The notes under the pieces are model-generated. The model saw only the letters and a program-made list of their open reading frames with translations, was not told the DNA's origin and made no database searches. Source: Eukaryota sp. TZLM1-RC (Eukaryota > Protista > Metamonada: BaSk clade). From it: a stretch of 64,000 bases of DNA. The DNA is taken from the NCBI GenBank assembly GCA_040285825.1, contig JAUPSS010000004.1, forward strand, positions 1,116,001 through 1,180,000, written 5' to 3'. The translations under genes and the position numbers were made by a program. Positions 13,860 through 44,010 of the stretch are shown here, one piece after another (the first letter of the stretch is position 1; each line of letters starts with the position of its first letter).

Positions 13860-13958
13860 TGATGCTTTATCCATATATGATAACAAAGAATAAGGAATAA
13901 TTTATTAGAATTTCACCGGCCCTTATAAAAACCATCACTAGTGAACTATGTTATATAA
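13860..13958 (-). repeat. 3' LTR (first ~37 nt deleted)
   Basis: Matches 43875-43973 with 2 mismatches and ends ...GCATCA. Confidence 0.9.
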
Positions 13959-16151: not shown

Positions 16152-16329
16152 TTTTTTTTTAAATTTAATTTTATTCTAAACCTATAAATCAACATCTAAA
16201 AATCCATCTCTCCCAAAACAAAAACACTAGATGCAACTCTCTCATAGTGAGATCCAAGAGAAAGCAAAGCATCAGAAACCATCTTCAACATCCCCTTAAA
16301 AATAGAAAACACAATTCTATTTTGCCAAA

Positions 16330-18514
16330 CCTGATGGAGTTAGACCAATTGCTATTGGAGAGTCATTAACCAGATTGCTTTCTTCGCTTGTTTTTAACAG
16401 AATTTCTACTAAAGCAAGGGACTATTTGAAGCCTTTCCAATTTGGTATAAAAACTGTTGAAGGTGCTTCTGTTGCTTCAATGACTTCAGATGTTTTTTTC
16501 AATAGTCAACAACATCAATATATTTTCAATTTGGATTTCAAAAATGCTTTCAATTCTGTGAAACGTAATTGTATTTTTGATGTGCTTCTTCATGATTTTC
16601 CTGAACTTTCTGCATATTTTTATTTATTTTATGGAAAAAAATCAGACTTAATTTTTGACTCCTTTACCTTTGAATCTTCTTCTGGTGTGAAACAAGGTGA
16701 TCCTCTTGGCCCTTTGCTGTTTTGTTTGGCTATTCATAATATTATTAAAATGACACAACAAGATTTCCCTGATTTGCGTATTGTTGCCTATATGGATGAC
16801 ATTTCTATTATTGGTTCTTTTGAAAGCATTTCTAGGGTCTCTGAAAACATTGCGGCGAAATACAAAGAAATTGGATTAGCTTTGAACCCATCTAAATGTC
16901 TCTTGATTGGTAGAGAAAAACAATCTTTGATGATTGGTGGAGCTCAGATTCCTTTTATCAATTATGACCAACAAGCTTTTAAGTTTCTTGGATGTTGGCT
17001 TGGCAATTTGGATGAAATTTATTCCCAGTTAAACAATTTATTGGAGAAGTTTGACAAGGATCTTAGTTTTATTGCTGAATGTGACATTGAGAAACACATC
17101 AAATTTTTTATTTTAAAAATTTGTTATTCTGGAAAATTCACTCATATTTTAAGGTCAACTCCCCCTTCGGTATCTCTCAATTTTTGCAGATCTTTTAACA
17201 AACTTCGAGTCAAATTTTTTTCTTTTTTATTAGAAGTAAATGAATCTTTAATTCGAAGTCATGTATTTTGTTCAGCAGATTTGGGTGGCATTGGATTCAC
17301 CAAATCTTCGATTCTGTGTAAAGCAGCATTTTTGGGAGGTGGTAAAAATTTTGTTTTTGAATTTTTCCAAAGGTTCCCTTTTGATGTTCATCTGATCAAT
17401 GGTGAATCAAATTTTTATTTGAATCAACTTCAAATCGAATTAGATAATTTGCCTAGTGATATCTGGATTCAGTGTTTTCCTCAAAATGTTCAAGAAATTC
17501 CCACCCGATCACTTCCAAATTTACGTTTTTGCTTGAAAAAGCTTCAGCACCATCTGGTTAAATTATATGAAGGCTTGGATTATGAAGTAAGACTTGGCTT
17601 GGCCAAAACTAAAAATCCCGCTTTCGGTAATTTTTTAAAGGATATTCGTGATAGTTCAGCTGCTGCTTTAGTAACTCAAGTTCCCTCTGTTTATGGACTT
17701 TTGTTAAAAAACAATGAATGGCTTCTAAACATGCGTTTTCGTTGTTTTCTGTGGCCAAACAATTTGCCCAATCATTTAACTTGTAAATGTGGTAAACCTC
17801 TTTTGTTTACTCATCTTTTGAACTGTAAACATTTCATTACGTTTAGAAGCAAAGTGCATAATAACGTCAGGGACCAAATTTATGTAATGTGCAAATCATA
17901 TCGAGTAGATTCCTTTTTAGAACCGCTGTTATCAAAATTAATTCTCGATGATCCCAATATTGATAGTACGCGTTACAACAGAGCTTCTATGGGTCTAACT
18001 AGAGGTGATCTAGTTGTTCCTGGTTTAAATGGTAGTTTTACTATTTTGGACGCCATGTCTATTGACCCTTGTAATTCCTCTAACGAACATTTCATTAACT
18101 CGGATGTAAATAATCCTCTTCTTGCAGGCGAAAAATATAAAATTGCTAAATATGCGAAACCCATTTCCTCGGTTAATGAAAATTCTCATGCCCAATATAA
18201 TTTATGTCCATTTGTTTTTTCTTTGCTTGGATCTCTAGGTAAGGCTGCTATGGCTTTCCTTGAGGATTTTGTTGTAGTTGTAAAGGAAAGAACTGGAAGA
18301 ATTTTCAATCGTGTTTACTGGCAAAACAGGCTTGTATTTTCTATTTTTAAGGGAATGGTAACACTAATTTCTGATTCACTATCTTCTTTTGGGAAATTTT
18401 CTGAATCTTTAGCGATTAATTGTTTTGATGTAGGGGAGGCAGGTTTTGAGGATGTGGAGTTTTAATTGTGTATTTCATATTTGTTGTTGAATAAAAATAA
18501 ATTGCAAAAAAAAA
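16330..18514 (+). mobile_element. Family A, 5'-truncated, with an intact RT-RLE frame (16375-18465)
   Basis: TSD TTTGCCAAA at 16321-16329 and 18515-18523. Confidence 0.92.
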
Positions 18515-18775
18515 TTTGCCAAAACAATCTGTTGAAATTTCTGCCAGTTCTTCTCTTTACAATCATTTCAAAATCAACCAAAAAACGTAAAGCAGTTGGT
18601 GCAAGTGAACCAAAAAGGGAAAATACAAATGGATACAAATTGTATTTTGCATGCTGTAGACTGGCCAATTTGGACAAAGGTTCATTGTATTTTTTGAATT
18701 TAAAATTTTCAGCATTTGAAAGGGGATTACGAATTTCAGAATTAACAAGCCTTTCATTTGAGGCATTACAAGGAT

Positions 18776-19791
18776 TTTGCAATATATTTTTATTCAATAA
18801 CAAATATGAAATACACAATTAAAACTCCACATCCTCAAAACCTGCCTCCCCTACATCAAAACAATTAATCGCTAAAGATTCAGAAAATTTCCCAAAAGAA
18901 GATAGTGAATCAGAAATTAGTGTTACCATTCCCTTAAAAATAGAAAATACAATCCTGTTTTGCCAGTAAACACGATTGAAAATTTTCTTCCAGTTCTTTC
19001 CTTTACAACTACAACAAAATCCTCAAGGAAAGCCATAGCAGCCTTACCTAGAGATCCAAGCAAAGAAAAAACAAATGGACATAAATTATATTGGGCATGA
19101 GAATTTTCATTAACCGAGGAAATGGGTTTCGCATATTTAGCAATTTTATATTTTTCGCCTGCAAGAAGAGGATTATTTACATCCGAGTTAATGAAATGTT
19201 CGTTAGAGGAATTACAAGGGTCAATAGACATGGCGTCCAAAATAGTAAAACTACCATTTAAACCAGGAACAACTAGATCACCTCTAGTTAGACCCATAGA
19301 AGCTCTGTTGTAACGCGTACTATCAATATTGGGATCATCGAGAATTAATTTTGATAACAGCGGTTCTAAAAAGGAATCTACTCGATATGATTTGCACATT
19401 ACATAAATTTGGTCCCTGACGTTATTATGCACTTTGCTTCTAAACGTAATGAAATATTTACAGTTCAAAAGATGAGTAAACAAAAGAGGTTTACCACATT
19501 TACAAGTTAAATGATTGGGCAAATTGTTTGGCCACAGAAAACAACGAAAACGCATGTTTAGAAGCCATTCATTGTTTTTTAACAAAAGTCCATAAACAGA
19601 GGGAACTTGAGTTACTAAAGCAGCAGCTGAACTATCACGAATATCCTTTAAAAAATTACCGAAAGCGGGATTTTTAGTTTTGGCCAAGCCAAGTCTTACT
19701 TCATAATCCAAGCCTTCATATAATTTAACCAGATGGTGCTGAAGCTTTTTCAAGCAAAAACGTAAATTTGGAGGTGATCGGGTGGGAATTT
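18776..19791 (-). mobile_element. Family A 3' kb inserted in frame into B
   Basis: TSD CATTACAAGGAT at 18764-18775 and 19792-19803; junction DPCN|EIPTRS. Confidence 0.9.
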
Positions 19792-20293
19792 CATTACAAG
19801 GATCAACAGACATTACATCCAATAAAATGAAGCTTCCATCTAATCCAGGTAATATGACATCACCTCTATTATTCTTATGAAAATCATTTTCAGCATCAAA
19901 CAAATTTGACAACAGAGGTTCCAAGAAGGATTCAATTCTATGAGATTTACACATACAATATAACTGGTCTCTTACAGCATCATGAACCTTGCTTCTAAAA
20001 GTAATAAAATGTTTACAATTTAACAAATGAGTAGTTGTAATTTCTCGAGAACATTTACAAATTAAATTATGAGGTAAATTATCAGGCCAGATAAAGGAAC
20101 GAAATCTCATATTCAGAGTCCAAGCAGAATCGGATAAGAGAGTACCATAAACTTGTGGAATTGTTGTTACTAAGGCAGAAGAAGTACTGTCACACATATC
20201 TTGTAAAAGATTTGCAAAAGCGGGATTCTTTTTCTTGGCCAAGCCAAGTCTAACATCAAAATCCAAGCTTTCAAAAATCTTTGACAATTTTTG

Positions 20294-22405
20294 CAATTTA
20301 TTTTTATTCAACAACAAATATGAAATACACAATTAAAACTCCACATCCTCAAAACCTGCCTCCCCTACATCAAAACAATTAATCGCTAAAGATTCAGAAA
20401 ATTTCCCAAAAGAAGATAGTGAATCAGAAATTAGTGTTACCATTCCCTTAAAAATAGAAAATACAATCCTGTTTTGCCAGTAAACACGATTGAAAATTCT
20501 TCCAGTTCTTTCCTTTACAACTACAACAAAATCCTCAAGGAAAGCCATAGCAGCCTTACCTAGAGATCCAAGCAAAGAAAAAACAAATGGACATAAATTA
20601 TATTGGGCATGAGAATTTTCATTAACCGAGGAAATGGGTTTCGCATATTTAGCAATTTTATATTTTTCGCCTGCAAGAAGAGGATTATTTACATCCGAGT
20701 TAATGAAATGTTCGTTAGAGGAATTACAAGGGTCAATAGACATGGCGTCCAAAATAGTAAAACTACCATTTAAACCAGGAACAACTAGATCATCTCTAGT
20801 TAGACCCATAGAAGCTCTGTTGTAACGCGTACTATCAATATTGGGATCATCGAGAATTAATTTTGATAACAGCGGTTCTAAAAAGGAATTTACTTGATAT
20901 GATTTGCACATTACATAAATTTGGTCCCTGACGTTATTATGCACTTTGCTTCTAAACGTAATGAAATGTTTACAGTTCAAAAGATGAGTAAACAAAAGAG
21001 GTTTACCACATTTACAAGTTAAATGATTGGGTAAATTGTTTGGCCACAGAAAACAACGAAAACGCATGTTTAGAAGCCATTCATTGTTTTTTAACAAAAG
21101 TCCATAAACAGAGGGAACTTGAGTTACTAAAGCAGCAGCTGAACTATCACGAATATCCTTTAAAAAATTACCGAAAGCGGGATTTTTAGTTTTGGCCAAG
21201 CCAAATCTTACTTCATAATTCAAGCCTTCATATAATTTAACCAGATGGTGCTGAAGCTTTTTCAAGCAAAAACGTAAATTTGGAAGTGATCGGGTGGGAA
21301 TTTCATTACAAGGATCAACAGACATTACATCCAATAAAATGAAGCTTCCATCTAATCCAGGTAATATGACATCACCTCTATTATTCTTATGAAAATCATT
21401 TTCAGCATCAAACAAATTTGACAACAGAGGTTCCAAGAAGGATTCAATTCTATGAGATTTACACATACAATATAACTGGTCTCTTACAGCATCATGAACC
21501 TTGCTTCTAAAAGTAATAAAATGTTTACAATTTAACAAATGAGTAGTTGTAATTTCTCGAGAACATTTACAAATTAAATTATGAGGTAAATTATCAGGCC
21601 AGATAAAGGAACGAAATCTCATATTCAGAGTCCAAGCAGAATCGGATAAGAGAGTACCATAAACTTGTGGAATTGTTGTTACTAAGGCAGAAGAAGTACT
21701 GTCACACATATCTTGTAAAAGATTTGCAAAAGCGGGATTCTTTTTCTTGGCCAAGCCAAGTCTAACATCAAAATCCAAACTTTCAAAAATCTTTGACAAT
21801 TTTTGTTGAAGCTTTTTACAGCAAAACTGTAAATTAAAAAAGAGATCGGTTTGGAATTTCTTGAATTGATTGAGGAAAACATTTGGTCCAAATTTGTGGC
21901 GGCAATTTTTCAAGTTCACAAGATAACTCATACAAATAGGGACTGCAATTGGGAACTAACAGATGAGAATCATCAGGAAATCTACGAGAAAATTCATAAA
22001 TAAAATTTTTGCCACCACCCAAGAATGCTGATTGACACAAAATTGAAGATTTAGTAAATCCAATACCACCCAAATTTGCTGAAGAAAATAAATGGCTTTT
22101 CAACATTCCTGGTTCTACATCCAATAAATCAGCAAAAAATTCTGTTCTCAATGAATTAAATGAACGACAAAAATCTAATGCTGTGGAAGGAGCACAAGAT
22201 CTCAAAATGTGGGTTATTCTCCCAGTGTAGCAAATTTTAAGCATGAAAAATTTAATATGCTTTTCTATATCTAAAGAAGAAATTGAATCAAGTTCAAATT
22301 TCATTTTTTCCAAAATAACTTGCAATTCATTCTGAATTTGAGGCACGATTCCTAACCAACAACCAAGGAACTTAAAAGCATCACTACTATAATTAGTAAA
22401 AGGTA
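20294..22405 (-). mobile_element. B::A chimeric copy (A 20294-21303, B 21304-22405)
   Basis: Same DPCN|EIPTRS junction as at 19791; ORF 20333-21931. Confidence 0.88.
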
Positions 22406-22407
22406 CA

Positions 22408-23055
22408 TTAGAAAATACAATCCTGTTTTGCCAGTAAACACGATTGAAAATTCTTCCAGTTCTTTCCTTTACAACTACAACAAAATCCTTAAGGAAAGCC
22501 ATAGCAGCCTTACCTAGAGATCCAAGCAAACAAAAAACAAATGGACATAAATTATATTGGGCATGAGAATTTTCATTAACCGAGGAAATGGGTTTCGCAT
22601 ATTTAGCAATTTTATATAAACTTCTGTCTGGAATTTCTTGAATGGATATGGGGAAACATGATTGCCATAAGTCGGGAGATAAACTGGATATTTTTTCACT
22701 TAAGTTATCGAGGAATAGGCTATTTGTAGTAATTTGAAAATTATTTTCAACGCTAACAAAACATTAAACAAAAAACTAGAACTCAATATCCTCAATACAT
22801 GCATCAACATCATTTTTTTTTGACCAAAATTTTATTTTTATTCAAAACCTATTTTTTATTTATTGAATTTGCACACTCAATTAAATTAACTCAATACTAA
22901 TGGGACGACTATCATTGAACCAAGATTTCCTCTACAAAATCTTGATCTGCTTGCTGTCTAGCTAAAGCTTCTCTTATTCGATTGAAAAACCGTGGTAGTC
23001 TATTAATAATGGCAAATTGAATCCGTGAACGCCATAAAAATATATCAAATCTTAC
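22408..23055 (-). mobile_element. Run of short fragments: A internal (22408-22615), D internal (22612-22728), G 3' end (22729-22812), B tail (22813-22852), C 3' end (22853-23053)
   Basis: The A, D, B and C pieces match copies elsewhere in the window. G occurs only here and reads DVDACIEDIEF* with its own UTR. Confidence 0.8.
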
Positions 23056-23059
23056 TGTT

Positions 23060-23932
23060 TCTTTTTTTTTTCAAAAATTTTTTATTCAACAACAAATATG
23101 AAATACACAATTAAAACTCCACATCCTCAAAACCTGCCTCCCCTACATCAAAACAATTAATTGCTAAAGATTCAGAAAATTTCCCAAAAGAAGATAGTGA
23201 ATCAGAAATTAGTTTTACCATTCCCTTAAAAATAGAAAATACAATCCTGTTTTGCCAGTAAACACGATTGAAAATTCTTCCAGTTCTTTCCTTTACAACT
23301 ACAACAATATCCTCAAGGAAAGCCATAGCAGCCTTACCTAGAGATCCAAGCAAAGAAAAAACAAAGGGACATAAATTATATTGTGCATGAGAATTTTCAT
23401 TAATCGAGGAAATGGGTTTCGCATATGTAGCAATTTTATATTTTTCGCCTGCAAGAAGAGGATTATTTACATCCGAGTTAATGAGATGTTCGTTAGAGGA
23501 ATTACAAGGGTCAACAGACATGGCGTCCAAAATAGTAAAACTACCATTTAAACCAGGAACAACTAGATCACCTCTAGTCAGACCCATAGAAGCTCTGTTG
23601 TAACGCGTACTATCAATATTGGGATCATCAAGAATTAATTTTGATAACAGCGGTTCTAAAAAGGAATCTACTCGATATGATTTGCACATTACATAAATTT
23701 GGTCCCTGACGTTATTATGCACTTTGTTTCTAAACGTAATGAAATGTATGCAGTTCAAAAGATGAGTAAACAAAAGAGGTTTACCACATTTACAAGTTAA
23801 ATGATTGGGCAAATTGTTTGGCCACAGAAAACAACGAAAACGCATGTTTAGAAGCCATTCATTGTTGTTTAACAAAAGTCCATAAACAGAGGGAACATGA
23901 GTTACTAAAGCAGCAGCTGAACTATCACGAAT
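23060..23932 (-). mobile_element. Family A, 5'-truncated
   Basis: ORF 23111-23875 plus tail. Confidence 0.9.
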
Positions 23933-26393
23933 ATTTTTTTTATTTAATTTTAATTTTATTCAAAACCTATAAATCAACATCTAAAAAATCCATCTCTCCC
24001 AAAACAAAAACACTAGATGCAACTCCCTCATAGTGAGAACCAAGAGACAGCAAAGCATCAGAAACCATCTTCAACATCCCCTTAAAAATAGAAAACACAA
24101 TTCTATTTTGCCAAAACAATCTGTTGAAATTTCTCCCACTTCTTCTCTTTTCAATCATTTCAAAATCATCCAAAAAACGTAAAGCAGTTGGTGCAAGTGA
24201 ACCAAAGAGGGAAAATACAAATGGATACAAATTGTATTTTGCATGCTGTAGACTGGCCAATTTGGACAAAGGTTCATTGTATTTTTTGAATTTGAAATTT
24301 TCAGCATTTGAAAGAGGATTATGAATTTCAGAATTAACAAGCCTTTCATTTGAGGCATTACAAGGATCAACAGACATTACATCCAATAAAATGAAGCTTC
24401 CATCTAATCCAGGTAATATAACATCACCTCTATTATTCTTATGAAAATCATCTTCAGCATCAAACAGATTTGACAACAGAGGTTCCAAAAAGGATTCAAT
24501 TCTATGAGACTTACACATACAATATAACTGGTCTCTTACAGCATCATGAACTTTGCTTCTAAAAGTAATAAAATGTTTAAAATTTAACAAATGAGTAATT
24601 GTAATTTCTCGAGAACATTTACAAATTAAATTATGAGGTAAATTATCAGGCCAGATAAAGGAACGAAATCTCATATTCAGAGTCCAAGCAGAATCGGATA
24701 AGAGAGTACCATAAACTTGTGGAATTGTTGTTACTAAGGCAGAAGAAGTACTGTCACACATATCTTGTAAAAGATTTGCAAAAGCGGGATTCTTTTTCTT
24801 GGCCAAGCCAAGTCTAACATCAAAATCCAAGCTTTCAAAAATCTTTGACAATTTTTGTTGAAGCTTTTTACAGCAAAACTGTAAATTAAAAAGAGATCGG
24901 TTTGGAATTTCTTGAATTGATTGAGGAAAACATTTTTTCAAGTTCACAAGATAACTCATACAAATATGGACTGCAACTGGGAACTACCAGATGAGAATCA
25001 TTAGGAAATCTACGAGAAAATTCATAAAAATTTTTTTGCCACCACCCAAGAATGCTGATTGACACAAAATTGAAGATTTAGTAAATCCAATACCACCCAA
25101 ATTTGCTGAAGAAAATAAGTGACTTTTCAACATTCCTGGTTCTACATCCAATAAATCAGCAAAAAATTCTGTTCTCAATGAATTAAAAGAACGACAAAAA
25201 TCTAATGCTATGGAAGGAGCACAAGATCTCAAAATGTGGGTTATTCTCCCAGTGTAGCAAATTTTGAGCATGAAAAATTTAATGTGTTTTTCTATATCTA
25301 AAGCAGAAATTGAATCAAGTTCAATTTTCATTTTTTCCAAAATAGCTTGCAATTCATTCTGCATTTGAGGCACGTTTCCTAACCAACAACCAAGGAACTT
25401 AACAGAATCACTACTATAATTAGTAAAAGGGACAATAGAATCATTTATCACGAGATCTTGAGCAGAAGAGCCAATGAGAAGGCATTTGCTCGCATTAAGA
25501 TGAAGCCCAATATTTCCATATGAATCAGCAATTTCTTGAGCAACCAATTCTAGTAAATCAAATGAACCAATCAAGGATATATCATCCTTATAAGCAACTA
25601 TTTTTATAGAAGGGTATTTTTGCTTAATGATATTTAAAGTTTTGTGAATAGCTAAACAAAACAATATTGGGCCTAAAGGATCACCTTGCTGCACACCAGA
25701 AGATGATTTAAGACCACATGAATTATAAATTAAATCTGATTCTTTCCCATAAAAATGGAAGAAAAAAACTCGATAGCTCAGGAAAATCAGATTTAATTAC
25801 TTCAAAATTGCTTCTCGCTTTACAGAATTAAAAGCATTTTTAAAGTCCAGATTAAAGATAAAGTTATTTTCTTCTGCATTAAAAAAAGTGTCAGAGGCAA
25901 TAGCAGCAACAGAAGCACCATCAATTGTTTTGATTCCAAATTGATGAGGATTCAAAAATGTAGAAGCTTTGTCTTTGACACGATCGAAGACAATTGATGC
26001 CAGCAAACGAGATAGAGATTCACCAACAGCAATTGGGCGTATTCCATCAGGTTTGATTCCGTTTCCAGGCTTTACTAAAGCAATCAGACGTGCAGCGAGT
26101 AATTCAAATGGAGGATTAATTTTGTAAACAATTAATTGTTGAAAATAATGGGCTAGATCATCAGCAATTTCGGGAGCACTGGAACACGCTATTTTTAACA
26201 GATCAAAAGGGAACCTTTGGAAAAATTCAAAAACAAAATTTTTTCCACGTCCCAAAAATGCTGCTTTACACAGAATCGAAGATTTTGTGAATCAAAACAA
26301 TTTTGCCAAAACAATCTGTTGAAATTTCTGCCAGTTCTTCTCTTTACAATCATTTCAAAATCATCCAAAAAACGTAAAGCAGTTGGTGCAAGT
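23933..26393 (-). mobile_element. Family B (23933-26205), followed by A (26200-26293) and B (26295-26393) internal fragments
   Basis: RT and RLE motifs, with YKDD mutation and frameshifts; junction RFPFD|LLKIAC. Confidence 0.85.
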
Positions 26394-26799
26394 TTGAAAC
26401 CTGCTTTTGTTCCCTTTTTCCAGTGTATTTTGAACCTCTTTGTATTCAAATATACATCAAAAACACTCTGAAGAACAGTTATTTATTCTTCAAGATAAAA
26501 GCTAATAACTATAGTTTGACCTTTAAAGGTGATAGTGTACGGATAACTTAGGAATAGGTTTACTTGATCCTAGTGTATATCAAGAAACTCATTTTTTTGA
26601 AAAGATCTTGGTTGTCCTAATTGAGCCTCCTTACCATAAATCGATTGCCTTTGAGTTCAGTTGTCGGTATTGGTTAACTTTATATTATAGTTTCTTATAG
26701 TTTAGGTATATTTGTGCTCTAGCACTTAAGTGGAAGGAACCACTTTTACCTTCGTAATAAATAACTTTATGTTTTAACTTGGTATCAACCCTCACCAAA

Positions 26800-26886
26800 T
26801 ACCATCCTGATGACCCCAACCAAGTCAGTCTAGCTAGAGAACTATCTGAGCTCAGGAGAAGACTTGAAGAACAAGATCAATATTAA
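26800..26886 (+). pseudogene. Remnant related to the Gag-like ORF at 184-3063
   Basis: DDPNQVSLARELSELRRRLEE resembles EDPAQIALANEVARLREELE. Confidence 0.5.
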
Positions 26887-27401
26887 CTGTAAAAAAAGTT
26901 GATGATAAAGAGGCTGTATCGACTACCATTCAAAACGAGTCACGAGTTTGTTTAAATCTATATCATGCTTATAATTACAATCATCAATACATTGAAGTAA
27001 TAAAGTTTCTTTAATATTTGTACTTTATTTACAGAATCATTGACCTAAACATCATGCGTTCACCATAAATTATTCAATTATTATTAAATTAATTCCAAAA
27101 TTGTTTATTAAATCATATATCAACAGGGGGAACTTTCATTGATTACAGGTGTTTATATAGATTTTGTGATTGATCAAATGATTTTTTTGAAAATTAGGTG
27201 TGGAAAACTTAACATAAATTTTTCACAGGAGGTTATTATGACTTGGATCATAAAGATGTGAAAGCGTAAGTATCTGTCAACATGCAAAGAAAATGAGGAA
27301 ATTTGGGAATACTAATAAATCAAGTGAACAATTCTGAATTGTATTGTTTGAATATCAATCATTATGGTCAAAAGAGAGAACTTGTTATCCAAGAACTATT
27401 A

Positions 27402-27596
27402 TTTTTTTACCAAAATTTTAATTTTATTCAAAACCTATAAATCAACATCTAAAAAATCCATCTCTCCCAGAACAAAAACACTAGATTCAACTCTCTCATA
27501 GTGAGATCCAAGAGAAAGCAAAGCATCAGAAACCATCTTCAACATCCCCTTAAAAATAGAAAACACAATTCTATTTTGCCAAAACAATCTGTTGAA
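27402..27596 (-). mobile_element. Family B 3' stub
   Basis: B C-terminus and tail; imperfect AACTAT.ATT flanks. Confidence 0.85.
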
Positions 27597-27830
27597 ACTA
27601 TAATTATCTTTTCTTAATAACATTTCTTCTTTAAATCGTTGAAATTTACCATCACACTCAAAATCAAGTGACATTTTTACAACATACTTATAATGAATGA
27701 AACAATTTATTATAGAAATTGCTGGTGAATGTGGTGGTACATAGTTGCCATGTAATTTATTTTCAATATTTTGTAGAAATTTTCACCTTCCTTTACCTAT
27801 TGAATGATGATTAACAATAACCACCACATT

Positions 27831-28378
27831 TTTTTACATATATATTTATTTTTAAAACTGGAATAATTATTGAGATAAAAAACGCATCTAGAATTCAATA
27901 TCCTCCAAACAAGCGTCACTATTACTGAACCTACTCACAGCATTACGTTCATATTCTACACCAATAGCTAAAAGTGCCTTTGAAATCATTGTTGGAATAG
28001 ACTTGAAAATGCAAAAAAACAATTCTATTTAACCAGAAAGTGGAGTTCATTGTTTTACCAGACCTATTCAGTAACACTCTTTTGAAATTCTCAAAAAAAG
28101 TGCAACCCTGAAGGTCCAATATTGCCAAAAAGAGAAATTGCAAACGGCACAAACTGATATTTCACATGTTCCACTCTACCTAACTGTGCCAAAGGTTCTT
28201 CATATTTTTTATCTTCTTTTTTTCGGCGTTAGATAACGGCGAGTCAGCGGAATACACTAAGCGAGCAGCAGAATTTTGCAAACATCCACTGAGACAACGT
28301 CTACAACATTGATAACACCATCGATCCCTGGAGCTACTAAATCTGCCCTTCTTTTACCAAAGGAATCATCAGTTTGAC
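27831..28378 (-). mobile_element. Family F, 5'-truncated and degenerate RLE
   Basis: GKRRADLVAPG..VVDVVSVDVC...DACLEDIEF*. TSD ACCACCACATT at 27820-27830 and 28379-28389. Confidence 0.88.
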
Positions 28379-28884
28379 ACCACCACATTGGTTCAATCGT
28401 CGAAACTTGGTCAGTATGAGACTGAAACGAAGAATGTCGTTATCAGTTCTTATAAGTAATAACCGCAATTAATTATAGCATTAACATAACTATTAATGCA
28501 AGAAAATTCAACAACCGAAAATTAATTCAATTATTTACTATTTACATTTATAATATGCAACTTAACATAATTCGATGGAGCCAACAACAAATATATCAAA
28601 TGTGTTTAATTTGAATAAAAAGTTGAAATAAAAACGTTGACCCGTTGTAAACAATATGAGTAAGTAAGTTTAACAATTTTAATTAACATGTTTTGCTTTT
28701 TGAAAAACATTTCGAAGTACCAGAGCTCAATTTCAATTTGAGTGATCGTTTGATATAGTTTCTCTTTATTGGTTTGATTTGCTAATTGATTATCATTTTT
28801 TATTTAACAATATTTGATAAAAACTAAAAATAGATAAAAGTATTATTAATAAACAAGGTTATTTATTAAATAGACCACAGTACT

Positions 28885-31800
28885 TTATAATCTTCTTCTT
28901 CTTGAGTGTCTGGCAAGTCTTCTTTTACAATCTTCTATCCTTTTATCAGCTCTTGGATGACCAGCATTCTTGGCCTTTTCATACCATTCAATAGCTTTTT
29001 TTTTCTCTCCCTCCCTTAGTCAACCCTCTCATATTTCACTTTCTGTCACGGCGTCAAAGTCGTACTGTGTCTTTGCCAAAACGATGCCAGTGACTGACAG
29101 TGACTCTGATACTGATTGGAATGCCCAAGCAAAGATTCTACCCATCAGATCAAACTCATCCCCTTCACTTCTCCACTCTCCCCACCCTTCAAGCTATGCT
29201 CGAAATTCTTCTCAAAAAAATTTGAAAATTTTTAAAAAAGACTTTTTGCCTTTGTGTGATGCCCCTGATATTACGCCTGAAAAAGTGCAAAAAAGAAGAC
29301 ATACCTGTTCCAAATGTGGCAAGGTTGGTCATAACATTAGAAAATGTCCTGATATTATTACCGAAAAATGAGACTGAAAACCAATATTTCTATTGTTAAT
29401 AGTTTGCAAACGCCATCCGAACTAAATCTTCCTCCTGTTCCCAATGTTTCTGCTGATGATGTTAATTATGATTTAAATATTGATCAAACTCATTTACCAA
29501 AAACTGTTGCTCCTGATCCTACGGATAATGTCTTGAAACATAGTTGTCCTTTTGCAAAAAGTTCCTCTCTAATTCTTCTAATGGTCGCCCTCTATTGTTT
29601 TGTTTTTGACTGTCAAACAAGTGATTCTCTTCGTACACCTGTTAAAATTCCTGTAGAGGTGAGTCCTGCCAGTTCTGTTCCTTTGTCAATGGAAATGCGT
29701 TCTTTTTCTTCGCAATTGAAATTAAACAAATGGAACATAACAAGATTTTGGAAATTCTTTGCCAAAAAGAATAAGAAGAAAAATTAATTACAAACCAAAA
29801 CAGAGAAAAGCTAATTCATCTTTTCAAGCAAAAAAATTGTTTTTGAGAGGTAGATATGGAAGCGGATTAAAAAATATTTTTCGGGAAAACTGGCTGATAC
29901 CAATCTCGAAACTGTTGAAAAATTGAAATCCCTCCATCCAACTGAACATTTTTGCCCCAGTAAGCCTTCTATTTGTCAATATTGGCTCGAAAATCCATTT
30001 CAGGCTCACGAAGTATTGAATGCCGTTGCTAAATTACCAAAAGGAAAAGCTGCTGGTCCTTCAGGCATTTCCTTTGATTTGTTAAAAACTGCCTGTAAAA
30101 ATGCTCCTGAAATTGTTGAGGATCTTGCTTCCTATTTTCAAAATTTAATGTGTTTAAATTATGTTCCTCCGCCTGAATTGACTGCTGCCCGTTTAGTTGC
30201 TTTAGTTAAACCTGGTAAAGGTGACAAACCTGATGGAGTTAGACCAATTGCTATTGGAGAGTCATTAACCAGATTGCTTTCTTCGCTTATTTTTAACAGA
30301 ATTTCTACTAAAGCAAGGGACTATTTGAAGCCTTTCCAATTTGGTATAAAAACTGTTGAAGGTGCTTCTGTTGCTTCAATGACTTCAGATGTTTTTTTCA
30401 ATAGTCAACAGCATCAATATATTTTCAATTTGGATTTCAAAAATGCTTTCAATTCTGTGAAACGTAATTGTATTTTTGATGTCCTTCTTCATGATTTTCC
30501 TGAACTTACTGCATATTTTTATTTATTTTATGGAAAAAATCAGACTTAATTTTTGACTCCTTTACCCTTGAATCTTCTTCTGGTGTGAAACAAGGTGATC
30601 CTCTAGGCCCTTTGCTGTTTTGTTTGGCTATTCATAATATTATTAAAATGACACAACAAGATTTCCCTGATTTGCGTATTGTTGCCTATATGGATGACAT
30701 TTCTATTATTGGTTCTTTTGAAAGCATTTCTAGGGTTTCTGAAGACATTGCGGCGAAATACAAAGAAATTGGTTTAGCTTTGAACCCATCTAAATGTCTC
30801 TTGATTGGTAGAGAAAAACAATCTTTGATGATTGGTGGAGCTCAGATTCCTTTTATCAATTATGACCATCAAGCTTTTAAGTTTCTTGGATGTTGGCTTG
30901 GCAATTTGGATGAAATTTATTCCCAGTTAAACAATTTATTGGAGAAGTTTGACAAGGATCTTAGTTTTATTGCTGAATGTGACATTGAGAAACACATCAA
31001 ATTTTTTTATTTTAAAAATTTGTTATTCTGGAAAATTCACTCATATTTTAAGGTCAACTCCCCTTCGGTATCTCTCAATTTTTGCAGATCTTTTTAACAA
31101 ACTTCGAGTCAAATTTTTTTCTTCTTTATTAGAAGTAAATGAATCTTTAATTCGAAGTCATGTATTTTGTTCAGCAGATTTGGGTGGAATTGGATTCACC
31201 AAATCTTCGATTCTGTGTAAAGCAGCATTTTTGGGAGGTGGTAAAATTTTGTTTTTGAATTTTTCCAAAGGTTCCCTTTTGATGTTCATCTGATCAATGG
31301 TGAATCAAATTTTTACTTGAATCAACTGCAATTTGAATTAGAAAATTTGCCTAGTGATATCTGGATTCAGTGTTTTCCTCAAAATGTTCAAGAAATTCCC
31401 ACTCGATCACTTCCAAATTTACGTTTTTGCTTGAAAAAGCTTCAGCACCATCTGGTTAAATTATATGAAGGCTTGGATTATGAAGTAAGACTTGGCTTGG
31501 CCAAAACTAAAAATCCCGCTTTCGGTAATTTTTTAAAGGATATTCGTCATAGTTCAGCTGCTGCTTTAGTAACTCAAGTTCCCTCTGTTTATGGACTTTT
31601 GTTAAAAGACAATGAATGGCTTCTAAACATGCGTTTTCGTTGTTTTCTGTGGCCAAACAATTTGCCCAATCATTTAACTTGTAAATGTGGTAAACCTCTT
31701 TTGTTTACTCATCTTTTGAACTGTAAACATTTCATTACGTTTAGAAGCAAAGTGCATAATAACGTCAGGGACCAAATTTATGTAATGTGCAAATCATATC

Positions 31801-33460
31801 GTGTAGATTCCTTTTTAGAACCGCTGTTATCAAAATTAATTCTTGATGATCCCAATATTGATAGTACGCGTTACAACAGAGCTTCTATGGGTCTGACTAG
31901 AGGTGATCTAGTTGTTCCTGGTTTAAATGGTAGTTTTACTATTTTGGACGCCATGTCTATTGACCCTTGTAATTCCTCTAACGAACATTTCATTAACTCG
32001 GATGTAAATAATCCTCTTCTTGCAGGCGAAAAATATAAAATTGCTAAATATGCGAAACCCATTTCCTCGGTTAATGAAAATTCTCATGCCCAATATAATT
32101 TATGTCCATTTGTTTTTTTCTTTGCTTGGATCTCTAGGTAAGGCTGCTATGGCTTTCCTGGAGGATTTTGTTGTAGTTGTAAAGGAAAGAACTGGAAGAA
32201 TTTTCAATCGTGTTTACTGGCAAAACAGGATTGTATTTTCTATTTTTAAGGGAATGGTAACACTAATTTCTGATTCACTATCTTCTTTTGGGAAATTTTC
32301 TGAATCTTTAGCGATTAATTGTTTTGATGTAGGGGAGGCAGGTTTTGAGGATGTGGAGTTTTAATTGTGTATTTCATATTTGTTGTTGAATAAAAAGTTT
32401 TAGAAAAAAAAAAAAAAAAATTCAATAGCTTGGTAAAGGTCTTTAGGTACACCGTTACCGTGTTCATAACAAACACCTAAATTGTATATTCCATTCTCAT
32501 CACCCAATTCAGCTGCTTTTTGGTAATAAAACACTGCTTGAGAATAGTCTTGTTTAACAAAACGAGCAAGGCGAAAACATTGACCTAGACCAACCATAGC
32601 ACCGGTATGACCAGCATCAGCACCTTTTTTGAACCAATAAAAAGCTTGTTGATGGTCTTGATCAATACCTTTGCCATCTCTATAACAAACACCTAAATCA
32701 AACATAGCAACGCTGATACCAGCTTCAGCTGCCTTGCTGAACCAATCAACAGCTTGTTGGTGATCCTTTTCTACACCAAGACCATGGTTATAACAATAGC
32801 CTACATTAAACATAGCACCAGCATAACCAGCATCAGCAGCTCTTCTCCACCAAAAAACTGCTTCTTGGTAGTGTTCATCATTGTAAAATTCCGATCCTTT
32901 TTCAAACATTTGTTCAGGCGTATCATCATCACTTGACTCAACTTCCAAATTTTCAAACCCACCCTCCAAATTTTGGTCAAAATCACTACTATTGATCTCT
33001 TCTTGGTCCTCATTAGAAGAACTATCATAAGCTACTACTTGGTTAGGATTACCAAAATTCTGATTTTCTGCAAAATTATTATAGCAAATTTGGATTGAAT
33101 TAATTTGTTTTTTTAAGTCCTTTTCTTTTTGGGCAAGATCGTCAATTTTGGAATTTGAATCGGTAATTTCTATTCTCAAATCATTTATTAATTGATCTCT
33201 ATTATTGATTTCTCGATCCTTTTCAAACAAAGTTTGGCTTAATTCTTGATTTCTAGAGACAAGATTAGAGTTCTGAAGTGTTAATTCTTGGTTTAATTCA
33301 TCAGAATTAGATTGAGCATGTTGTAAATTTTGAATTTCATGACTTAATTCTTGAATTGTCTGATTTAAATCCATCATAGATTTTCGGAAATTTTCATTTT
33401 CTAGGCTCAAATCTTCATTAATTTGGTCTTTTTCAGCACAATTTTGACAATTTTGCAAAA
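28885..33460 (-). pseudogene. Coiled-coil + Sel1-like-repeat protein gene, interrupted by A and fused at its 5' side to C
   Basis: About 5 SLR units (AMFNVGYCYNHGLGVEKDHQQAVDWFSKAA). DLYQAIE|WYEKAKNAGHPRADKRIEDCKRRLARHSRRRRL* rejoins across the TSD. Confidence 0.88.
28998..32419 (+). mobile_element. Family A, full length (~3.4 kb), with homopolymer frameshifts
   Basis: 5' leader, CSKCGKVGHNIRKC knuckle, RT, RLE and poly(A). TSD ATTCAATAGCTT at 28986-28997 and 32420-32431. Confidence 0.95.
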
Positions 33461-33469
33461 ATTAGAATT

Positions 33470-34546
33470 AGAATTATCAATCCAATCACAGTATACATCA
33501 CCTCTATCATCAGAACCAAAATTATTCAGAGAAAGTGTTTCCTTCAGCAGGGGCTCTTTGATACACGATATCCTTGCAGTTTGTGCCATATTGAAAACAG
33601 TGTCTCTAACAGCATCATGTAATGAAGAACGATAAGTTATCAATTTAGAGCAATTCAGAGCATGGCGCAAAATGGGTTGAGGTGAATTCGAACAAATACA
33701 TTTTTCTTTTGATAATAATTGGTTAATGGGGATGTTCAAATATAATCTCATTTTTGTTACAAATGCTTCATTAGTGGCACACAATCCAAATCTTCGTGGT
33801 ACAATGGTTACAAAAAGTGAAGAATCTGACGACTTGTTTTCACAAACACCCTTTTCCAATAACAATGAGTGAAGATCTTGATTTAAAACAGCCGAGCTGC
33901 ATATATTATTATAAAGATCTTTTCATACATTCCAGTCAATCTTTTCTGTAATGTTCGAAGAGTGTACTTCAAATTTAATACATTTTTTTCTGGAATAATG
34001 CCATTGAATGATTGGGGAAAACATCGACCCCATTTTTCTACATCAATTCTTGAAATTTCTTCATTTAATGCAAAAACAGTGGAACTTTGCGTTGTCATCA
34101 ATAAATCTTCCCAATCTGCAAATCTTTCGGAAAACTCAAAGATTGCATTTCTGCATCCACCAACAAAAGCACACGAGGTAAGAATAGAAGCCTTCGTCCA
34201 CCCTAAACCACCATAATGTGGACTAAGGTAAGCATGATCTGGAATTTGAAACATTTTACATCCCAGTAATTGAGACAGAACTTTTGCACGTAACTCATTA
34301 AACTTTTGAGCCAAAGGTCTAGTGACGAGAGGATTTGTAGATCGAAATATATGATTAAAATTGGAACTAAAACAGAGTCTTATAATGGTAAATTTGATGT
34401 GTTTTTTTATATCCAAATTCATCATTCGGTCAATTTTGTCAGAAATTGAGTTCAACTTTTCAAACAATTTTTTGGTAATTTCATCATTATTTCCTAAAAA
34501 CGAACCCAAATGACGAATAGCATCAATTGAATATAATTTGGCTTGA
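33470..34546 (-). mobile_element. Family C internal fragment
   Basis: QAKLYSID...DWIDNS; neither terminus is present. Confidence 0.88.
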
Positions 34547-34632
34547 TTTTTTTTTCTCCCTCCGCTGGTCAACCCTCTCATATTTCACTTTCTGTCACGG
34601 CGTCCAAGTTGTTCTGTGTCTTTGCCAAAACG

Positions 34633-37374
34633 ATGCCATTGACTGATAGTGACTCTGATACTGATTGGAACGCCCAAGCAAAGATTCTACCCATCAGATC
34701 AAGCCCATCCCCTTCACTTCTCCACTCTCCCCACCCTTCAAGCTATGCTCAAAATTCTTCTCAAAAAAATTTGAAAATTTTTAAAAAAGATTTTTTGCCT
34801 TTGTGTGATGCCCCTGATATTACGCCTGAAAAAGTGCAAAAAAGAAGACATACCTGTTCCAAATGTGGCAAGGTTGGTCATAACATTAGAAAATGTCCTG
34901 ATATTATTACCGAAAAAATGAGACTGAAAACCAATATTTCTATTGTTAATAGTTTGCAAACGCCATCCGAACTGAATCTTCCTCCTGTTCCCAATGTTTC
35001 TGCTGATGATGTTAATTATGATTTAAATATTGATCAAACTCATTTACCAAAAACTGTTGCTCCTGATCCTACGGATAATGTCTTGAAACATAATTGTCCT
35101 TTTTGCAAAAAGTTCCTCTCTAATTCTTCTAATGGTCGCCCTCTCTTGTTTTGTTTTGACTGTCAAACAAGTGATTCTCTTCGTACACCTGTTAAAATTC
35201 CTGTAGAGGTGAGTCCTGCGAGTTCTGTTCCTTTGTCAATGGAAATGCGTTCTTTTTCTTCGCAATTGAAATTAAACAAATGGAACATAACAAGATTTTG
35301 GAAATTCTTTGCCAAAAAGAATAAGAAGAAAATTAATTACAAACCAAAACAGAGAAAAGCTAATTCATCTTTTCAAGCAAGAAAATTGTTTTTGAGAGGT
35401 AGATATGGAAGCGGATTAAAAAATATTTTTTCGGGAAAACTGGCTGATACCAATCTCGAAACTGTTGAAAAATTGAAATCCCTCCATCCAACTGAACATT
35501 TTTGCCCCAGTAAGCCTTCTATTTGTCAATATTGGCTCGAAAATCCATTTCAGGCTCAAGAAGTATTGAATGCCGTTGCTAAATTACCAAAAGGAAAAGC
35601 TGCTGGTCCTTCAGGCATTTCCTTTGATTTGTTAAAAACTGCCTGTAAAAATGCTCCTGAAATTGTTGAGGATCTTGCTTCCTATTTTCAAAATTTAATG
35701 TGTTTAAATTATGTTCCTCCGCCTGAATTGACTGCTGCCCGTTTAGTTGCTTTAGTTAAACCTGGTAAAGGTGACAAACCTGATGGAGTTAGACCAATTG
35801 CTATTGGAGAGTCATTAACCAGATTGCTTTCTTCGCTTGTTTTTAACAGAATTTCTACTAAAGCAAGGGACTATTTGAAGCCTTTCCAATTTGGTATAAA
35901 AACTGTTGAAGGTGCTTCTGTTGCTTCAATGACTTCAGATGTTTTTTTCAATAGTCAACAACATCAATATATTTTCAATTTGGATTTCAAAAATGCTTTC
36001 AATTCTGTGAAACGTAATTGTATTTTTGATGTGCTTCTTCATGATTTTCCTGAACTTTCTGCATATTTTTATTTATTTTATGGAAAAAAATCAGACTTAA
36101 TTTTTGACTCCTTTACCTTTGAATCTTCTTCTGGTGTGAAACAAGGTGATCCTCTTGGCCCTTTGCTGTTTTGTTTGGCTATTCATAATATTATTAAAAT
36201 GACACAACAAGATTTCCCTGATTTGCGTATTGTTGCCTATATGGATGACATTTCTATTATTGGTTCTTTTGAAAGCATTTCTAGGGTCTCTGAAAACATT
36301 GCGGCGAAATACAAAGAAATTGGATTAGCTTTGAACCCATCTAAATGTCTCTTGATTGGTAGAGAAAAACAATCTTTGATGATTGGTGGAGCTCAGATTC
36401 CTTTTATCAATTATGACCAACAAGCTTTTAAGTTTCTTGGATGTTGGCTTGGCAATTTGGATGAAATTTATTCCCAGTTAAACAATTTATTGGAGAAGTT
36501 TGACAAGGATCTTAGTTTTATTGCTGAATGTGACATTGAGAAACACATCAAATTTTTTATTTTAAAAATTTGTTATTCTGGAAAATTCACTCATATTTTA
36601 AGGTCAACTCCCCTTCGGTATCTCTCAATTTTTGCAGATCTTTTAACAAACTTCGAGTCAAATTTTTTTCTTTTTTTATTAGAAGTAAATGAATCTTTAA
36701 TTCGAAGTCATGTATTTTGTTCAGCAGATTTGGGTGGCATTGGATTCACCAAATCTTCGATTCTGTGTAAAGCAGCATTTTTGGGAGGTGGTAAAAATTT
36801 TGTTTTTGAATTTTTCCAAAGGTTCCCTTTTGATGTTCATCTGATCAATGGTGAATCAAATTTTTATTTGAATCAACTTCAAATCGAATTTGATAATTTG
36901 CCTAGTGATATCTGGATTCAGTGTTTTCCTCAAAATGTTCAAGAAATTCCCACCCGATCACCTCCAAATTTACGTTTTTGCTTGAAAAAGCTTCAGCACC
37001 ATCTGGTTAAATTATATGAAGGCTTGGATTATGAAGTAAGACTTGGCTTGGCCAAAACTAAAAATCCCGCTTTCGGTAATTTTTTAAAGGATATTCGTGA
37101 TAGTTCAGCTGCTGCTTTAGTAACTCAAGTTCCCTCTGTTTATGGACTTTTGTTAAAAAACAATGAATGGCTTCTAAACATGCGTTTTCGTTGTTTTCTG
37201 TGGCCAAACAATTTGCCCAATCATTTAACTTGTAAATGTGGTAAACCTCTTTTGTTTACTCATCTTTTGAACTGTAAACATTTCATTACGTTTAGAAGCA
37301 AAGTGCATAATAACGTCAGGGACCAAATTTATGTAATGTGCAAATCATATCGAGTAGATTCCTTTTTAGAACCG
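34633..37374 (+). CDS. Family A ORF (zinc knuckle, RT), with 5' leader from 34547 and 3'-truncated at FLEP
   Basis: Open frame from the ATG at 34633 with CRE-type RT motifs. Confidence 0.9.
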
Positions 37375-37873
37375 AAATGAGTTTGATCAATATTTAAATC
37401 ATAATTAACATCATCAGCAGAAACATTGGGAACAGGAGGAAGATTTAGTTCGGATGGCGTTTGCAAACTATTAACAATAGAAATATTGGTTTTCAGTCTC
37501 ATTTTTTCGGTAATAATATCAGGACATTTTCTAATGTTATGACCAACCTTGCCACATTTGGAACAGGTATGTCTTCTTTTTTGCACTTTTTCAGGCGTAA
37601 TATCAGGGGCATCACACAAAGGCAAAAAATCTTTTTTAAAAATTTTCAAATTTTTTTGAGAAGAATTTCGAGCATAGCTTGAAGGGTGGGGAGAGTGGAG
37701 AAGTGAAGGGGATGAGCTTGATCTGATGGGTAGAATCTTTGCTTGGGCGTTCCAATCAGTATCAGAGTCACTGTCAGTCACTGGCATCGTTTTGGCAAAG
37801 ACACAGTACGACTTTGACGCCGTGACAGAAAGTGAAATATGAGAGGGTTGACTAAGGGAGGGAGAAAAAAAAA
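37375..37873 (-). mobile_element. Family A 5' end (leader to DQTH)
   Basis: Near-identical to 28998-29495. Confidence 0.9.
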
Positions 37874-37940
37874 CAATTGACAATTTTTGTTGAAGCTTTT
37901 TACAGCAAAACTGTAAATTAAAAATACTAAAATACTTTTT

Positions 37941-38771
37941 TTTACAAAAATACTACCTAGAATTTTTATTTCATGTTTGCAAGTGGTAAAGCTACACTTG
38001 GGTAGGCCAAGGTTAACTCTAAAACGTTTGGCGCGTTCTAGGACCGTACCTACTCTAGATAGAAATTCATCCAGGGTCGAAGCTACTATTATTATATCAT
38101 CGATATAAATAAATACGCCCTCAGAATCAAGTAATATTTCCATCATCATGTTTTGGAAGACTGCAGGAACGTTCTTCAAACCAAAACAAGCCCTTTTAAA
38201 ACTGATCGACATCCCGGGAATTGATACGGTAGTTTTATCAATATCCTCTTCTGCAATTTTGAGCTGCCAAAATGCCTTAGGTAAATCTAGAGTTGCTATA
38301 AAATTAGCTTTACTTAGAAACTCTAAAATGTCGCTAATCCTGGGCAAATTTGCCTCTACAGGTTTAGTTAAATCATTTACTCCACCAATACCACTAAAAT
38401 CGCCAGTTAATCGTGGTTTCCTGTGATCAGGGTAAATCACAAGACAGATGGGACTACTGAATTGAGACTTTGCGGGCACAGCAAATCCATTACGGATCAA
38501 TTCGTTAAAAATTTCCTCGGCTACCCGTTGTTTTTCTGGGTTTAATCTTCGAGGTTTCCTTTTGACGACCTTACTTTCGTCATAAAATGGAATGGTCATC
38601 GGCTGACAATCAATTCCATCCAGGTGAGGTAGCCCACTAAATACATTTCTATATTTTTCGAGTAGCACGACTAGGCGTTCCTCGTCCCTAATGTCATCCA
38701 GGCATATTCTACAGCCCAACTCATCTAACTCATGTCCAAATGTGGAATGCCCAAAATCATTACCTAAGTCT
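37941..38771 (-). CDS. Gypsy reverse transcriptase segment
   Basis: FSSPICLV, LDLPKAFWQ, FGLKNVPAVFQ, YIDDIII. Confidence 0.92.
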
Positions 38772-38819
38772 TTTTTTTTTAAATTTAATTTTATTCTAAA
38801 CCTAAAAACTAAACCTAAA
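38772..38819 (-). mobile_element. 48-bp family B tail insertion with a stuttered 5' junction
   Basis: TSD ACCTAAGTCT at 38762-38771 and 38820-38829. Removal restores NKSDLG|NDFGHS in frame. Confidence 0.88.
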
Positions 38820-39551
38820 ACCTAAGTCTGATTTATTACTCAATTGTTCAATGAATCTAATTGGTTGACAAATTCTATTATCGAACTCACATTCAGCATT
38901 TAAGATGGTGCGATGTTCGCGATCCAAATTAATATTAAAACCGTGCTCCGTGCGTAGCCCCAAGGTTTGTAATAAGTCTCTTCCGATCAAAAAATTATTG
39001 GTACCAGGAATGATCTGGAATTCTATCCTTAAAAACACTTGAGTGGCCAAGCTACCCTCATTTAGAGCAAGAACACCACTTGCACATCCCAGGGTCGTGG
39101 AGCGAATACCATTTGCCGATAAGTATTCGACAGTCTTATTGTCATTAACTGTCATATTACATTTAGAGGCTAAATCCATTGATAATGCTGAAAATGCAGC
39201 TCCATTATCAATTTCGCCTTGTACTTCCACGTTATTTATGGTGCAGGTAAACCAAAGTTCCCCGTTAGAACTTTCTTGGTCCTCTGCTACCCTGGATAGT
39301 CTAACACTGTGGATAGAACCCACAGGATTGGATGACTCTCTAAATCTTTTTAATGGATTTAGGTGATTATAATTCGAATCTGTTTTGCTCATTTTATAAA
39401 TGGATTTGATTGAATTATTTGTAAGGTTATTGTTAAAAGATGTATAATCATCTGATTTATTACTACTACTTTTACGTTTTCTATCACGTCTTTCACCTCC
39501 TTGACGCTTTTTTGAACCAGGTCTTCCCACTAATTTAAAACATTTCTCTTC
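38820..39551 (-). CDS. Gypsy aspartic protease segment
   Basis: GEIDNGAAFS (DNG variant of D[ST]G) and FLIGRDLL. Confidence 0.85.
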
Positions 39552-39841
39552 TTAACTAAAACTTTTTATTCAACAACAAATATGAAATACACAATTAAAA
39601 CTCCACATCCTCAAAACCTGCCTCCCCTACATCAAAACAATTAATCGCTAAAGATTCAGAAAATTTCCCAAAAGAAGATAGTGAATCAGAAATTAGTGTT
39701 ACCATTCCCTTAAAAATAGAAAATACAATCCTGTTTTGCCAGTAAACACGATTGAAAATTCTTCCAGTTCTTTCCTTTACAACTACAACAAAATCCTCAA
39801 GGAAAGCCATAGCAGCCTTACCTAGAGATCCAAGAAAGAAG
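39552..39841 (-). mobile_element. Family A 3' stub inside the Gag zinc knuckle
   Basis: TSD TTTCTCTTC at 39543-39551 and 39842-39850. Removal gives CNLCKTNKHPEEKC (CX2CX4HX4C). Confidence 0.92.
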
Positions 39842-43889: not shown

Positions 43890-44010
43890 ATATGATAACA
43901 AAGAATAAGGAATAATTTATTAGAATTTCACCGGCCCTTATAAAGGCCATCACTAGTGAACTATGTTATATAAATATAAATGTACTAGACTAATTGTCCA
44001 CAGTACAACA
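43875..44010 (-). repeat. 5' LTR, 136 bp
   Basis: TGTTGTAC...AAGCATCA, containing TATA-like sequence and AATAAA. Confidence 0.9.

What the first reader, a model, noticed from the sequence alone, without database searches (positions are those of the whole stretch)
20281..37889. A 17.6-kb cargo-carrying insertion: one TSD pair and family A ends around other elements and host DNA
Seen: a 13-bp TSD in B flanks a block that begins with a complete A 5' leader and ends with an A 3' tail. After removing the later inserts (28998-32419, 27831-28378, 27402-27596), the interior still holds an inverted A, a C fragment, a Sel1 gene with ~2 kb of downstream non-element DNA, and pieces of A, B, C, D and G with no paired TSDs. 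Known: the R2 RT makes end-to-end template jumps in vitro. Inference: one integration event, or one unresolved break, stitched together many templates including host sequence. That would be an RT-driven gene-capture system far larger than the 3.4-kb element.
Basis: partly seen in the sequence, partly recalled or inferred. Interest (0 to 1): 0.85.

Follow-up and report, generated by a model that had tools for sequence, protein, structure and literature searches.

The report
Retrotransposon-edged copy of nearby chromosome DNA
In the protist Skoliomonas litria, a 17.6-kb block bracketed by a retrotransposon's target duplication is mostly one 8.2-kb stretch copied from a gene cluster 73 kb away, so it is a large, probably retrotransposon-triggered repair duplication and not a new system that stitches many RNAs together.

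Summary
The 13-bp TSD (20281-20293 / 37877-37889), the A tail and the A 5' leader are real. The interior is not a stitch of many templates. 21779-28997 plus 32421-33456 (8.2 kb) is one contiguous copy, 12 substitutions in 7.6 kb, of a kinase-coiled-coil-Sel1 locus 73 kb away on the same contig. The donor already holds the A/B/C/E patchwork and two of the three 'later inserts'; C, D and G are one family. Entry was by homology: new A 3' end, onto the neighbouring A-in-B insertion, then a B-to-B switch into the donor. 'One unresolved break' survives: the copy ends in a 12-nt match to the TSD (5-9 of 14,546 positions do), and the two A ends look like different lineages. Best reading (0.5): target-primed reverse transcription whose cDNA moved onto chromosomal DNA, like L1 templated insertions but about 30 times longer than is typical; rival (0.3): ordinary A insertion, later repair. 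A 4.4-kb right part has no donor found. No read set spanned the junctions. The scan has unchecked notes of TSD-bounded composites on other contigs of this genome.

The parts
20281..20293 (.). left TSD in family B
20294..21303 (-). family A 3' end with tail (A 2395-end); tail tag shared with the copies at 16323 and 18776; six private substitutions
21304..21778 (-). B copied from the local B at 19792-20266 (0 differences in 475 bp); same A|B junction as at 19791; switch to the donor B lies between 21416 (probably 21547) and 21778
21779..28997 (-). contiguous copy of the donor locus (L001 about 19070 down to 11857): element train B-A-E-C-A-B-A-B (21779-26393), host 3' DNA with the B-tail (27402-27597) and H (27831-28378) inserts, last codons of Sel1 gene
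28998..32420 (+). full-length A inserted after the copy was made, 11-bp TSD, absent from the donor
32421..33456 (-). rest of the donor copy: coiled-coil and Sel1 part of a kinase-coiled-coil-Sel1 gene, kinase domain missing; ends in a 12-nt match to the TSD
33457..33469 (.). 13-nt stuttered filler
33470..34546 (-). one internal fragment of the G/D/C family; no donor found
34547..37374 (+). A 1-2826, inverted relative to the block, complete 5' end, no 3' end; same lineage as the A tail at 20294
37375..37876 (-). A 5' arm (1-498) plus 3-nt filler; blunt join to the inverted A; a different A lineage
37877..37889 (.). right TSD, followed by B to 37925
18775..20293 (-). neighbouring 5'-truncated A (own 11-bp TSD) plus B: the local template
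16143..37949 (-). host of the block: a 959-bp 5'-truncated B inserted with a 9-10 bp TSD into a Ty3/Gypsy pol gene
13860..43973 (-). Ty3/Gypsy element that holds the whole nest; LTRs 97/99 identical

Best explanation
A retrotransposition-linked templated insertion. Shown: the block is a TSD-bounded structure whose interior is mostly a DNA-collinear copy of a locus 73 kb away, joined in through two homologous switches. Inferred: family A endonuclease/RT nicked B with a 13-nt stagger and made at least 1,010 nt of cDNA; the cDNA left its RNA and paired with the 1,017-bp A fragment lying 0.5 kb away in the same orientation; synthesis resumed at the end of that homology, copied 0.1-0.5 kb of local B, switched to a B copy in the donor cluster and copied 8.2 kb (SDSA/BIR-like); copying stopped where the new strand matched the TSD overhang over 12 nt; the remaining 4.4 kb (G/D fragment, inverted A, A 5' arm) was added at the still open break or was already there from an earlier insertion at this site. 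A later A landed in the copied Sel1 gene. The product is a dead, kinase-less partial gene duplicate, not a mobile cargo unit.
For: Donor collinearity: 7,701 bp at 99.55% and 1,058 bp at 99.3%, 12 substitutions in 7.6 kb, alleles specific to donor unit 1 and donor B0. Same A|B junction at 19791 and 21303 only. B after it identical to local B, unlike the donor at 4 sites, then donor-like from 21779. The A part differs from the local A at 9-10 sites, the last 18 nt from the junction (P about 4e-5 if copied together with the rest), so it came from another A molecule and the switch sits at the end of homology. Copy end matches the TSD over 12 nt; 5-9 of 14,546 non-B donor positions do; TSDs of simple insertions share no motif, so target preference does not explain it. 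5' arm and 3' tail belong to different A lineages, against one plain full-length A. Precedent: L1 templated insertions by an SDSA-like step (10.1101/2024.08.27.596794).
Against: The 4.4-kb right part lies between the 12-nt match and the right TSD and needs extra steps; no donor was found for it. The lineage link rests on one copy with a 5' end (34547), which may be recombinant. The region also shows plain DNA-level duplication (3,050-bp tandem unit in the donor). No reads span the junctions.
Confidence: 0.5

Rival explanations
1. Serial history: an ordinary full-length A inserted in B with the 13-bp TSD; a later break inside it was repaired by invading the neighbouring A fragment, switching B-to-B into the donor and end-joining; further insertions and deletions left the G/D and inverted A pieces. 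The TSD is then unrelated to the cargo.
For: One full-length A gives both precise ends at once; a switch at the end of homology is what strand invasion with flap removal predicts; nested TSD-paired insertions and tandem DNA duplications are common here; template switching between dispersed repeats is known in BIR (PMC4215184).
Against: Leaves the 12-nt match of the copy end to the TSD to chance and needs a recombinant A to explain different lineages at the two ends.
Confidence: 0.3
2. All-RNA copy choice: the RT switched by homology between an A RNA, a local read-through RNA and a kinase-Sel1 read-through RNA of more than 8 kb.
For: Polarity fits: the donor gene and its element train are all in one sense; LINE template switches inside one TSD are known (PMC2104539); a two-part B inside one TSD exists at 47404-49834.
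Against: The tract runs about 7 kb past the stop codon through several element 3' ends; polarity is forced by the B homology and so carries no information; no intron was available to test.
Confidence: 0.1
3. One reading: many separate RNAs joined by end-to-end jumps in one event, a gene-capture system.
For: Stuttered fillers at junctions; the right 4.4 kb has three unpaired junctions and an A that starts exactly at its first base.
Against: Most interior junctions pre-exist in the donor; the entry points are homologous, not end-to-end; no second copy of the block in the DNA held.
Confidence: 0.04
4. Misassembly (ABruijn nanopore assembly joining two loci through B repeats).
For: Old nanopore data and repeat-rich DNA (10.1101/2023.05.03.539051); no spanning reads.
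Against: Both ends anchor in the same B and the same Gypsy reading frame with matching TSDs; the copy carries its own A insert and substitutions; block-specific junctions have 0-5 nt of homology, where assemblers do not usually jump.
Confidence: 0.06

Closest known systems
L1 templated insertions / chimeric L1 with intrachromosomal duplication (10.1101/2024.08.27.596794; the original Gilbert et al. work is recalled, not read)
   Same: Element 3' tail at a TSD; growing cDNA pairs with nearby homologous DNA and duplicates a genomic segment.
   Different: There typically under 250 bp and within 15 bp of the site; here 8.2 kb from 73 kb away, two homologous switches, a restriction-like-endonuclease element in a metamonad.
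Repair-mediated duplications by SDSA (Pace et al. 2009, PMC2671141)
   Same: Intrachromosomal donor, microhomology and filler at the junction, sometimes a TSD, found as an interruption of a repeat.
   Different: Up to 619 bp with donors under 5 kb away; no element tail and leader at the ends.
BIR template switching between dispersed repeats (PMC4215184) and MoTeR-associated duplications in Magnaporthe (PMC7367193)
   Same: Repeat-to-repeat switches; duplications that begin at an element's 5' truncation boundary; tandem arrays by D-loop extension.
   Different: No TSD around the product; MoTeR cases start at telomeres.
LINE chimeric retrogenes by template switch (PMC2104539) and R2 template jumping (PMC8857657, seen by title and abstract only)
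   Same: Several templates inside one TSD.
   Different: Those join separate RNAs; here the bulk is one chromosomal tract with its own pre-existing junctions.
3' transduction
   Same: Host DNA inside an element-made TSD.
   Different: The host DNA lies between the A leader and the A tail, not 3' of the tail.

Membership tests
RLE-type non-LTR retrotransposon (family A) | single ORF with RT followed by CCHC and PD..D endonuclease motifs, no LTR | tested here: met
   RVT_1 hit; N-terminal zinc knuckle, C-terminal CCHC and an RGD-x13-D..K..KY motif read; weak hits to R2 structures
R2 clade | site-specific insertion in 28S rDNA | tested here: not met
   targets are other elements and genes with no shared motif
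CRE clade | RT phylogeny with CRE references | not tested
   no named reference sequences among the hits
Multi-RNA end-to-end chimera | interior junctions created in this event, no contiguous donor | tested here: not met
   donor holds the junctions of 21779-33456; still open for 33457-37876
Retrotransposition-linked templated insertion | element 3' tail primed at a TSD | tested here: met
Retrotransposition-linked templated insertion | genomic donor entered through homology with the cDNA | tested here: met
Retrotransposition-linked templated insertion | copying happened during integration, not later | tested here: inconclusive
   12-nt TSD match and lineage mismatch favour it; no pre-insertion allele available
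Repair-mediated duplication (SDSA) | intrachromosomal donor with microhomology or filler at the ends | tested here: met
3' transduction / retrogene | cargo 3' of the element, ending in its own poly(A); intron loss | tested here: not met
   cargo is internal and ends by B homology; no intron to test
Mobile gene-capture unit | second copies of the whole block at other sites | tested here: inconclusive
   none in the window and the loci held at that point; no genome-wide DNA search is offered for this eukaryote

The most novel reading that the evidence does not exclude
In Skoliomonas, insertions by non-specific RLE retrotransposons are routinely finished on chromosomal templates: the cDNA hops by homology through neighbouring element copies and copies many kilobases of genes in a single event closed at the TSD overhang, making this a main route by which the kinase-Sel1 family is duplicated and reshuffled.
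Probability: 0.2. Interest if true: 0.7.

Novelty: new variant of a known kind. Interest (0 to 1): 0.4.

Why it matters
If the copy was made during integration, a 3.4-kb RLE element can trigger multi-kilobase gene duplications, far beyond the templated insertions described for L1, and donor and copy are both in hand so the path can be read allele by allele. That bears on how gene families expand in repeat-rich protist genomes and on by-products of RLE-based gene insertion tools. If it was later repair, it is an ordinary repeat-guided segmental duplication. Either way it warns that one TSD around a mosaic does not show multi-RNA stitching: look for a donor first.

Tried and rejected
Reads: three public runs laid on 32400-38390 carry other alleles and only the uninterrupted forms of G/D, A, B and Gypsy; no listed contig spans a block junction, many rows were not shown, so this neither confirms nor refutes. 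Endonuclease preference for the TSD motif: rejected, TSDs share no motif and 12 other B copies with the motif are uninterrupted. Fold-back origin of the inverted A: rejected, the arms differ at 11 of 486 sites. Plain tandem duplication of 18775-20293: does not fit, 9-10 differences in the A part against 0 in 475 bp of B. Donor for the G/D-A-A part: junctions not found in L004, L006, L007 or the 51-kb donor region; two look-ups failed. A TSD around the second kinase-less paralogue in L002: none found. Family references for B and G/D/C were each joined from two window copies, only to give coordinates.

Full report
Source. The family A protein matches proteins of Eukaryota sp. TZLM1-RC, the skoliomonad I take to be Skoliomonas litria (the name link is from my own knowledge), and the window is JAUPSS010000004.1:1,116,001-1,180,000. 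That assembly is ABruijn on nanopore reads with Illumina polishing (10.1101/2023.05.03.539051).

Setting. A Ty3/Gypsy element (LTRs at 13860 and 43875, 97/99 identical) holds a 959-bp 5'-truncated B with a 9-10 bp TSD (16143 / 37941); a public contig shows the empty Gypsy site. This B holds three insertions: A at 16323-18514, A at 18775-19791 (each with its own TSD) and the block.

Observation. The 13-bp repeat is exact and B is collinear on both sides; simple insertions here have 9-13 bp TSDs. The A tail begins at 20294 and the complete A leader ends at 37873.

The donor. The Sel1 ORF is 98% identical to the coiled-coil part of P9112_006259, a kinase gene on the same contig. Its locus L001 matches the window over 21304-28997 (7,701 bp, 99.55%) and 32420-33475 (99.3%) without a break except the A insert. 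There are 12 substitutions in 7.6 kb, the rest being mostly homopolymer indels. The donor lies 73,129 bp to the left in direct orientation, has the whole kinase-coiled-coil-Sel1 gene next to ordinary genes, lacks the A insert, and already has the inserts at 27402 and 27831 and the element train with the same junctions. The donor train continues as a 3,050-bp unit repeated about 3.7 times; the window carries the alleles of unit 1 and of the first B, which fixes the source tract. So the direction is donor to window, and only 28998-32420 is a later insert.

The way in. The A|B junction at 21303 is the same as the 5' junction of the neighbouring A at 19791 and occurs nowhere else in the DNA held. 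B from 21304 to 21778 is identical to the local B and differs from the donor B at four sites; from 21779 on it follows the donor. That places a homologous B-to-B switch between 21416 (probably 21547) and 21778. The A part (20294-21303) differs from the neighbouring A at 9-10 sites, six of them private and five of these C to T on the cDNA strand; this is too many for a copy made with the rest (P about 4e-5). The last difference is 18 nt from the junction. Inference: a new A sequence paired with the neighbouring A and was extended from the end of the shared homology.

The way out. The copy ends at 33456 in TTTGACAATTTT, an exact 12-nt match to the target site. Outside B copies, 5 of 14,546 donor positions reach 12 nt and 9 reach 11; allowing about 40 comparisons this is still 1-2% (my estimate). 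TSDs here share no motif, so a cutting preference does not explain it. A 13-nt stuttered filler follows, then one G/D fragment, A 1-2826 inverted, and A 498-1, with blunt or near-blunt joins. No donor was found for this 4.4 kb. The tail at 20294 and the copies at 16323, 18775 and 34547 form one A lineage, while the 5' arm is 11/486 from the 34547 copy and 2-5/486 from four others, so the two ends probably did not come from one plain A, although a recombinant A cannot be excluded.

Mechanism. Shown: TSD, A ends, donor, two homologous switches, later A insert. Inferred: that these happened in one reaction (0.5) or as insertion followed by later repair (0.3). An RNA donor (0.1) would need read-through of about 7 kb past the stop codon and through several element 3' ends. 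Real template jumps probably occur in this genome at small scale, for example two B pieces inside one TSD at 47404-49834, and may explain the donor's train and the right part of the block, but not the Sel1 cargo. Misassembly (0.06) is unlikely on internal grounds but untested: the three runs available carry other alleles and showed no spanning contig.

Known kinds. It works like the templated insertions of human L1, where cDNA pairs with nearby homologous DNA and duplicates a segment, typically under 250 bp and within 15 bp (10.1101/2024.08.27.596794), and like SDSA repair duplications (PMC2671141) and repeat-guided BIR switches (PMC4215184; PMC7367193). It differs in size, distance and element class. 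Family A is RLE-type but fails the R2 site-specificity test; its clade was not tested. No paper on these elements turned up among the Skoliomonas papers listed.

Verdict. Observation partly confirmed; the many-RNA gene-capture reading is refuted for most of the block; a large retrotransposition-linked templated insertion is the best reading. New variant of a known kind, interest 0.4.

Noticed in passing
L001 16918-21455 and L005 (donor, record about 1,057,000-1,066,800): A 3,050-bp unit made of A, G/D/C, E, A and B pieces, all in one sense, is repeated about 3.7 times head to tail; units 2 and 3 differ at 11 sites, unit 1 at about 35.
   Followed up: partly
L007 990-8995 (another contig): Head-to-tail array A - filler - B(960 bp) - full-length A - same filler - B(960 bp); the B pieces are truncated within 5 nt of the 959-bp B that hosts the block. 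Could be 3' transduction plus template jump, or tandem duplication.
   Followed up: partly
window 47392-49846: One 12-bp TSD encloses two B pieces head to tail (505 bp and 1.9 kb) and a doubled tail: a small candidate for a true template jump.
   Followed up: partly
window 57797-57835; 37926-37940; L002 9860-9890: Stuttered fillers at 5' junctions (a 7-nt target unit repeated five times after family E).
   Followed up: no
L002 9836-11478: A second kinase-less Sel1 paralogue, cut within about 50 bp of the same point, behind a 29-bp G/D/C piece and a stuttered filler; no TSD found.
   Followed up: partly
window 16323-37374: Four A copies of one lineage (shared tail tag or alleles) lie within 21 kb, suggesting local reinsertion from a nearby source.
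   Followed up: partly
window 61272-62561 and 52820: Two 5' truncation points coincide with sites where another copy of the same family was cut by an insertion (the TSD at 47392 and the block's TSD motif). Unexplained.
   Followed up: no
window 20793-21220: Six private substitutions in 430 bp of the inner A, five C to T on the cDNA strand; may be damage to single-stranded DNA or an unsampled source copy.
   Followed up: partly
L001 11430-11440 vs window 32851: The donor kinase-Sel1 gene is split in two gene calls at a T7 run that is T6 and in frame in the copy; probably a sequencing error in the donor.
   Followed up: partly
window 184-3063 (-): 959-aa GC-rich ORF with no Pfam match, next to the start of the element nest.
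   Followed up: no
window 27831-28378; 9700-9791: Family H, a short insert with an 11-bp TSD and T-rich end, several copies in L002 and L007; not characterised.
   Followed up: no
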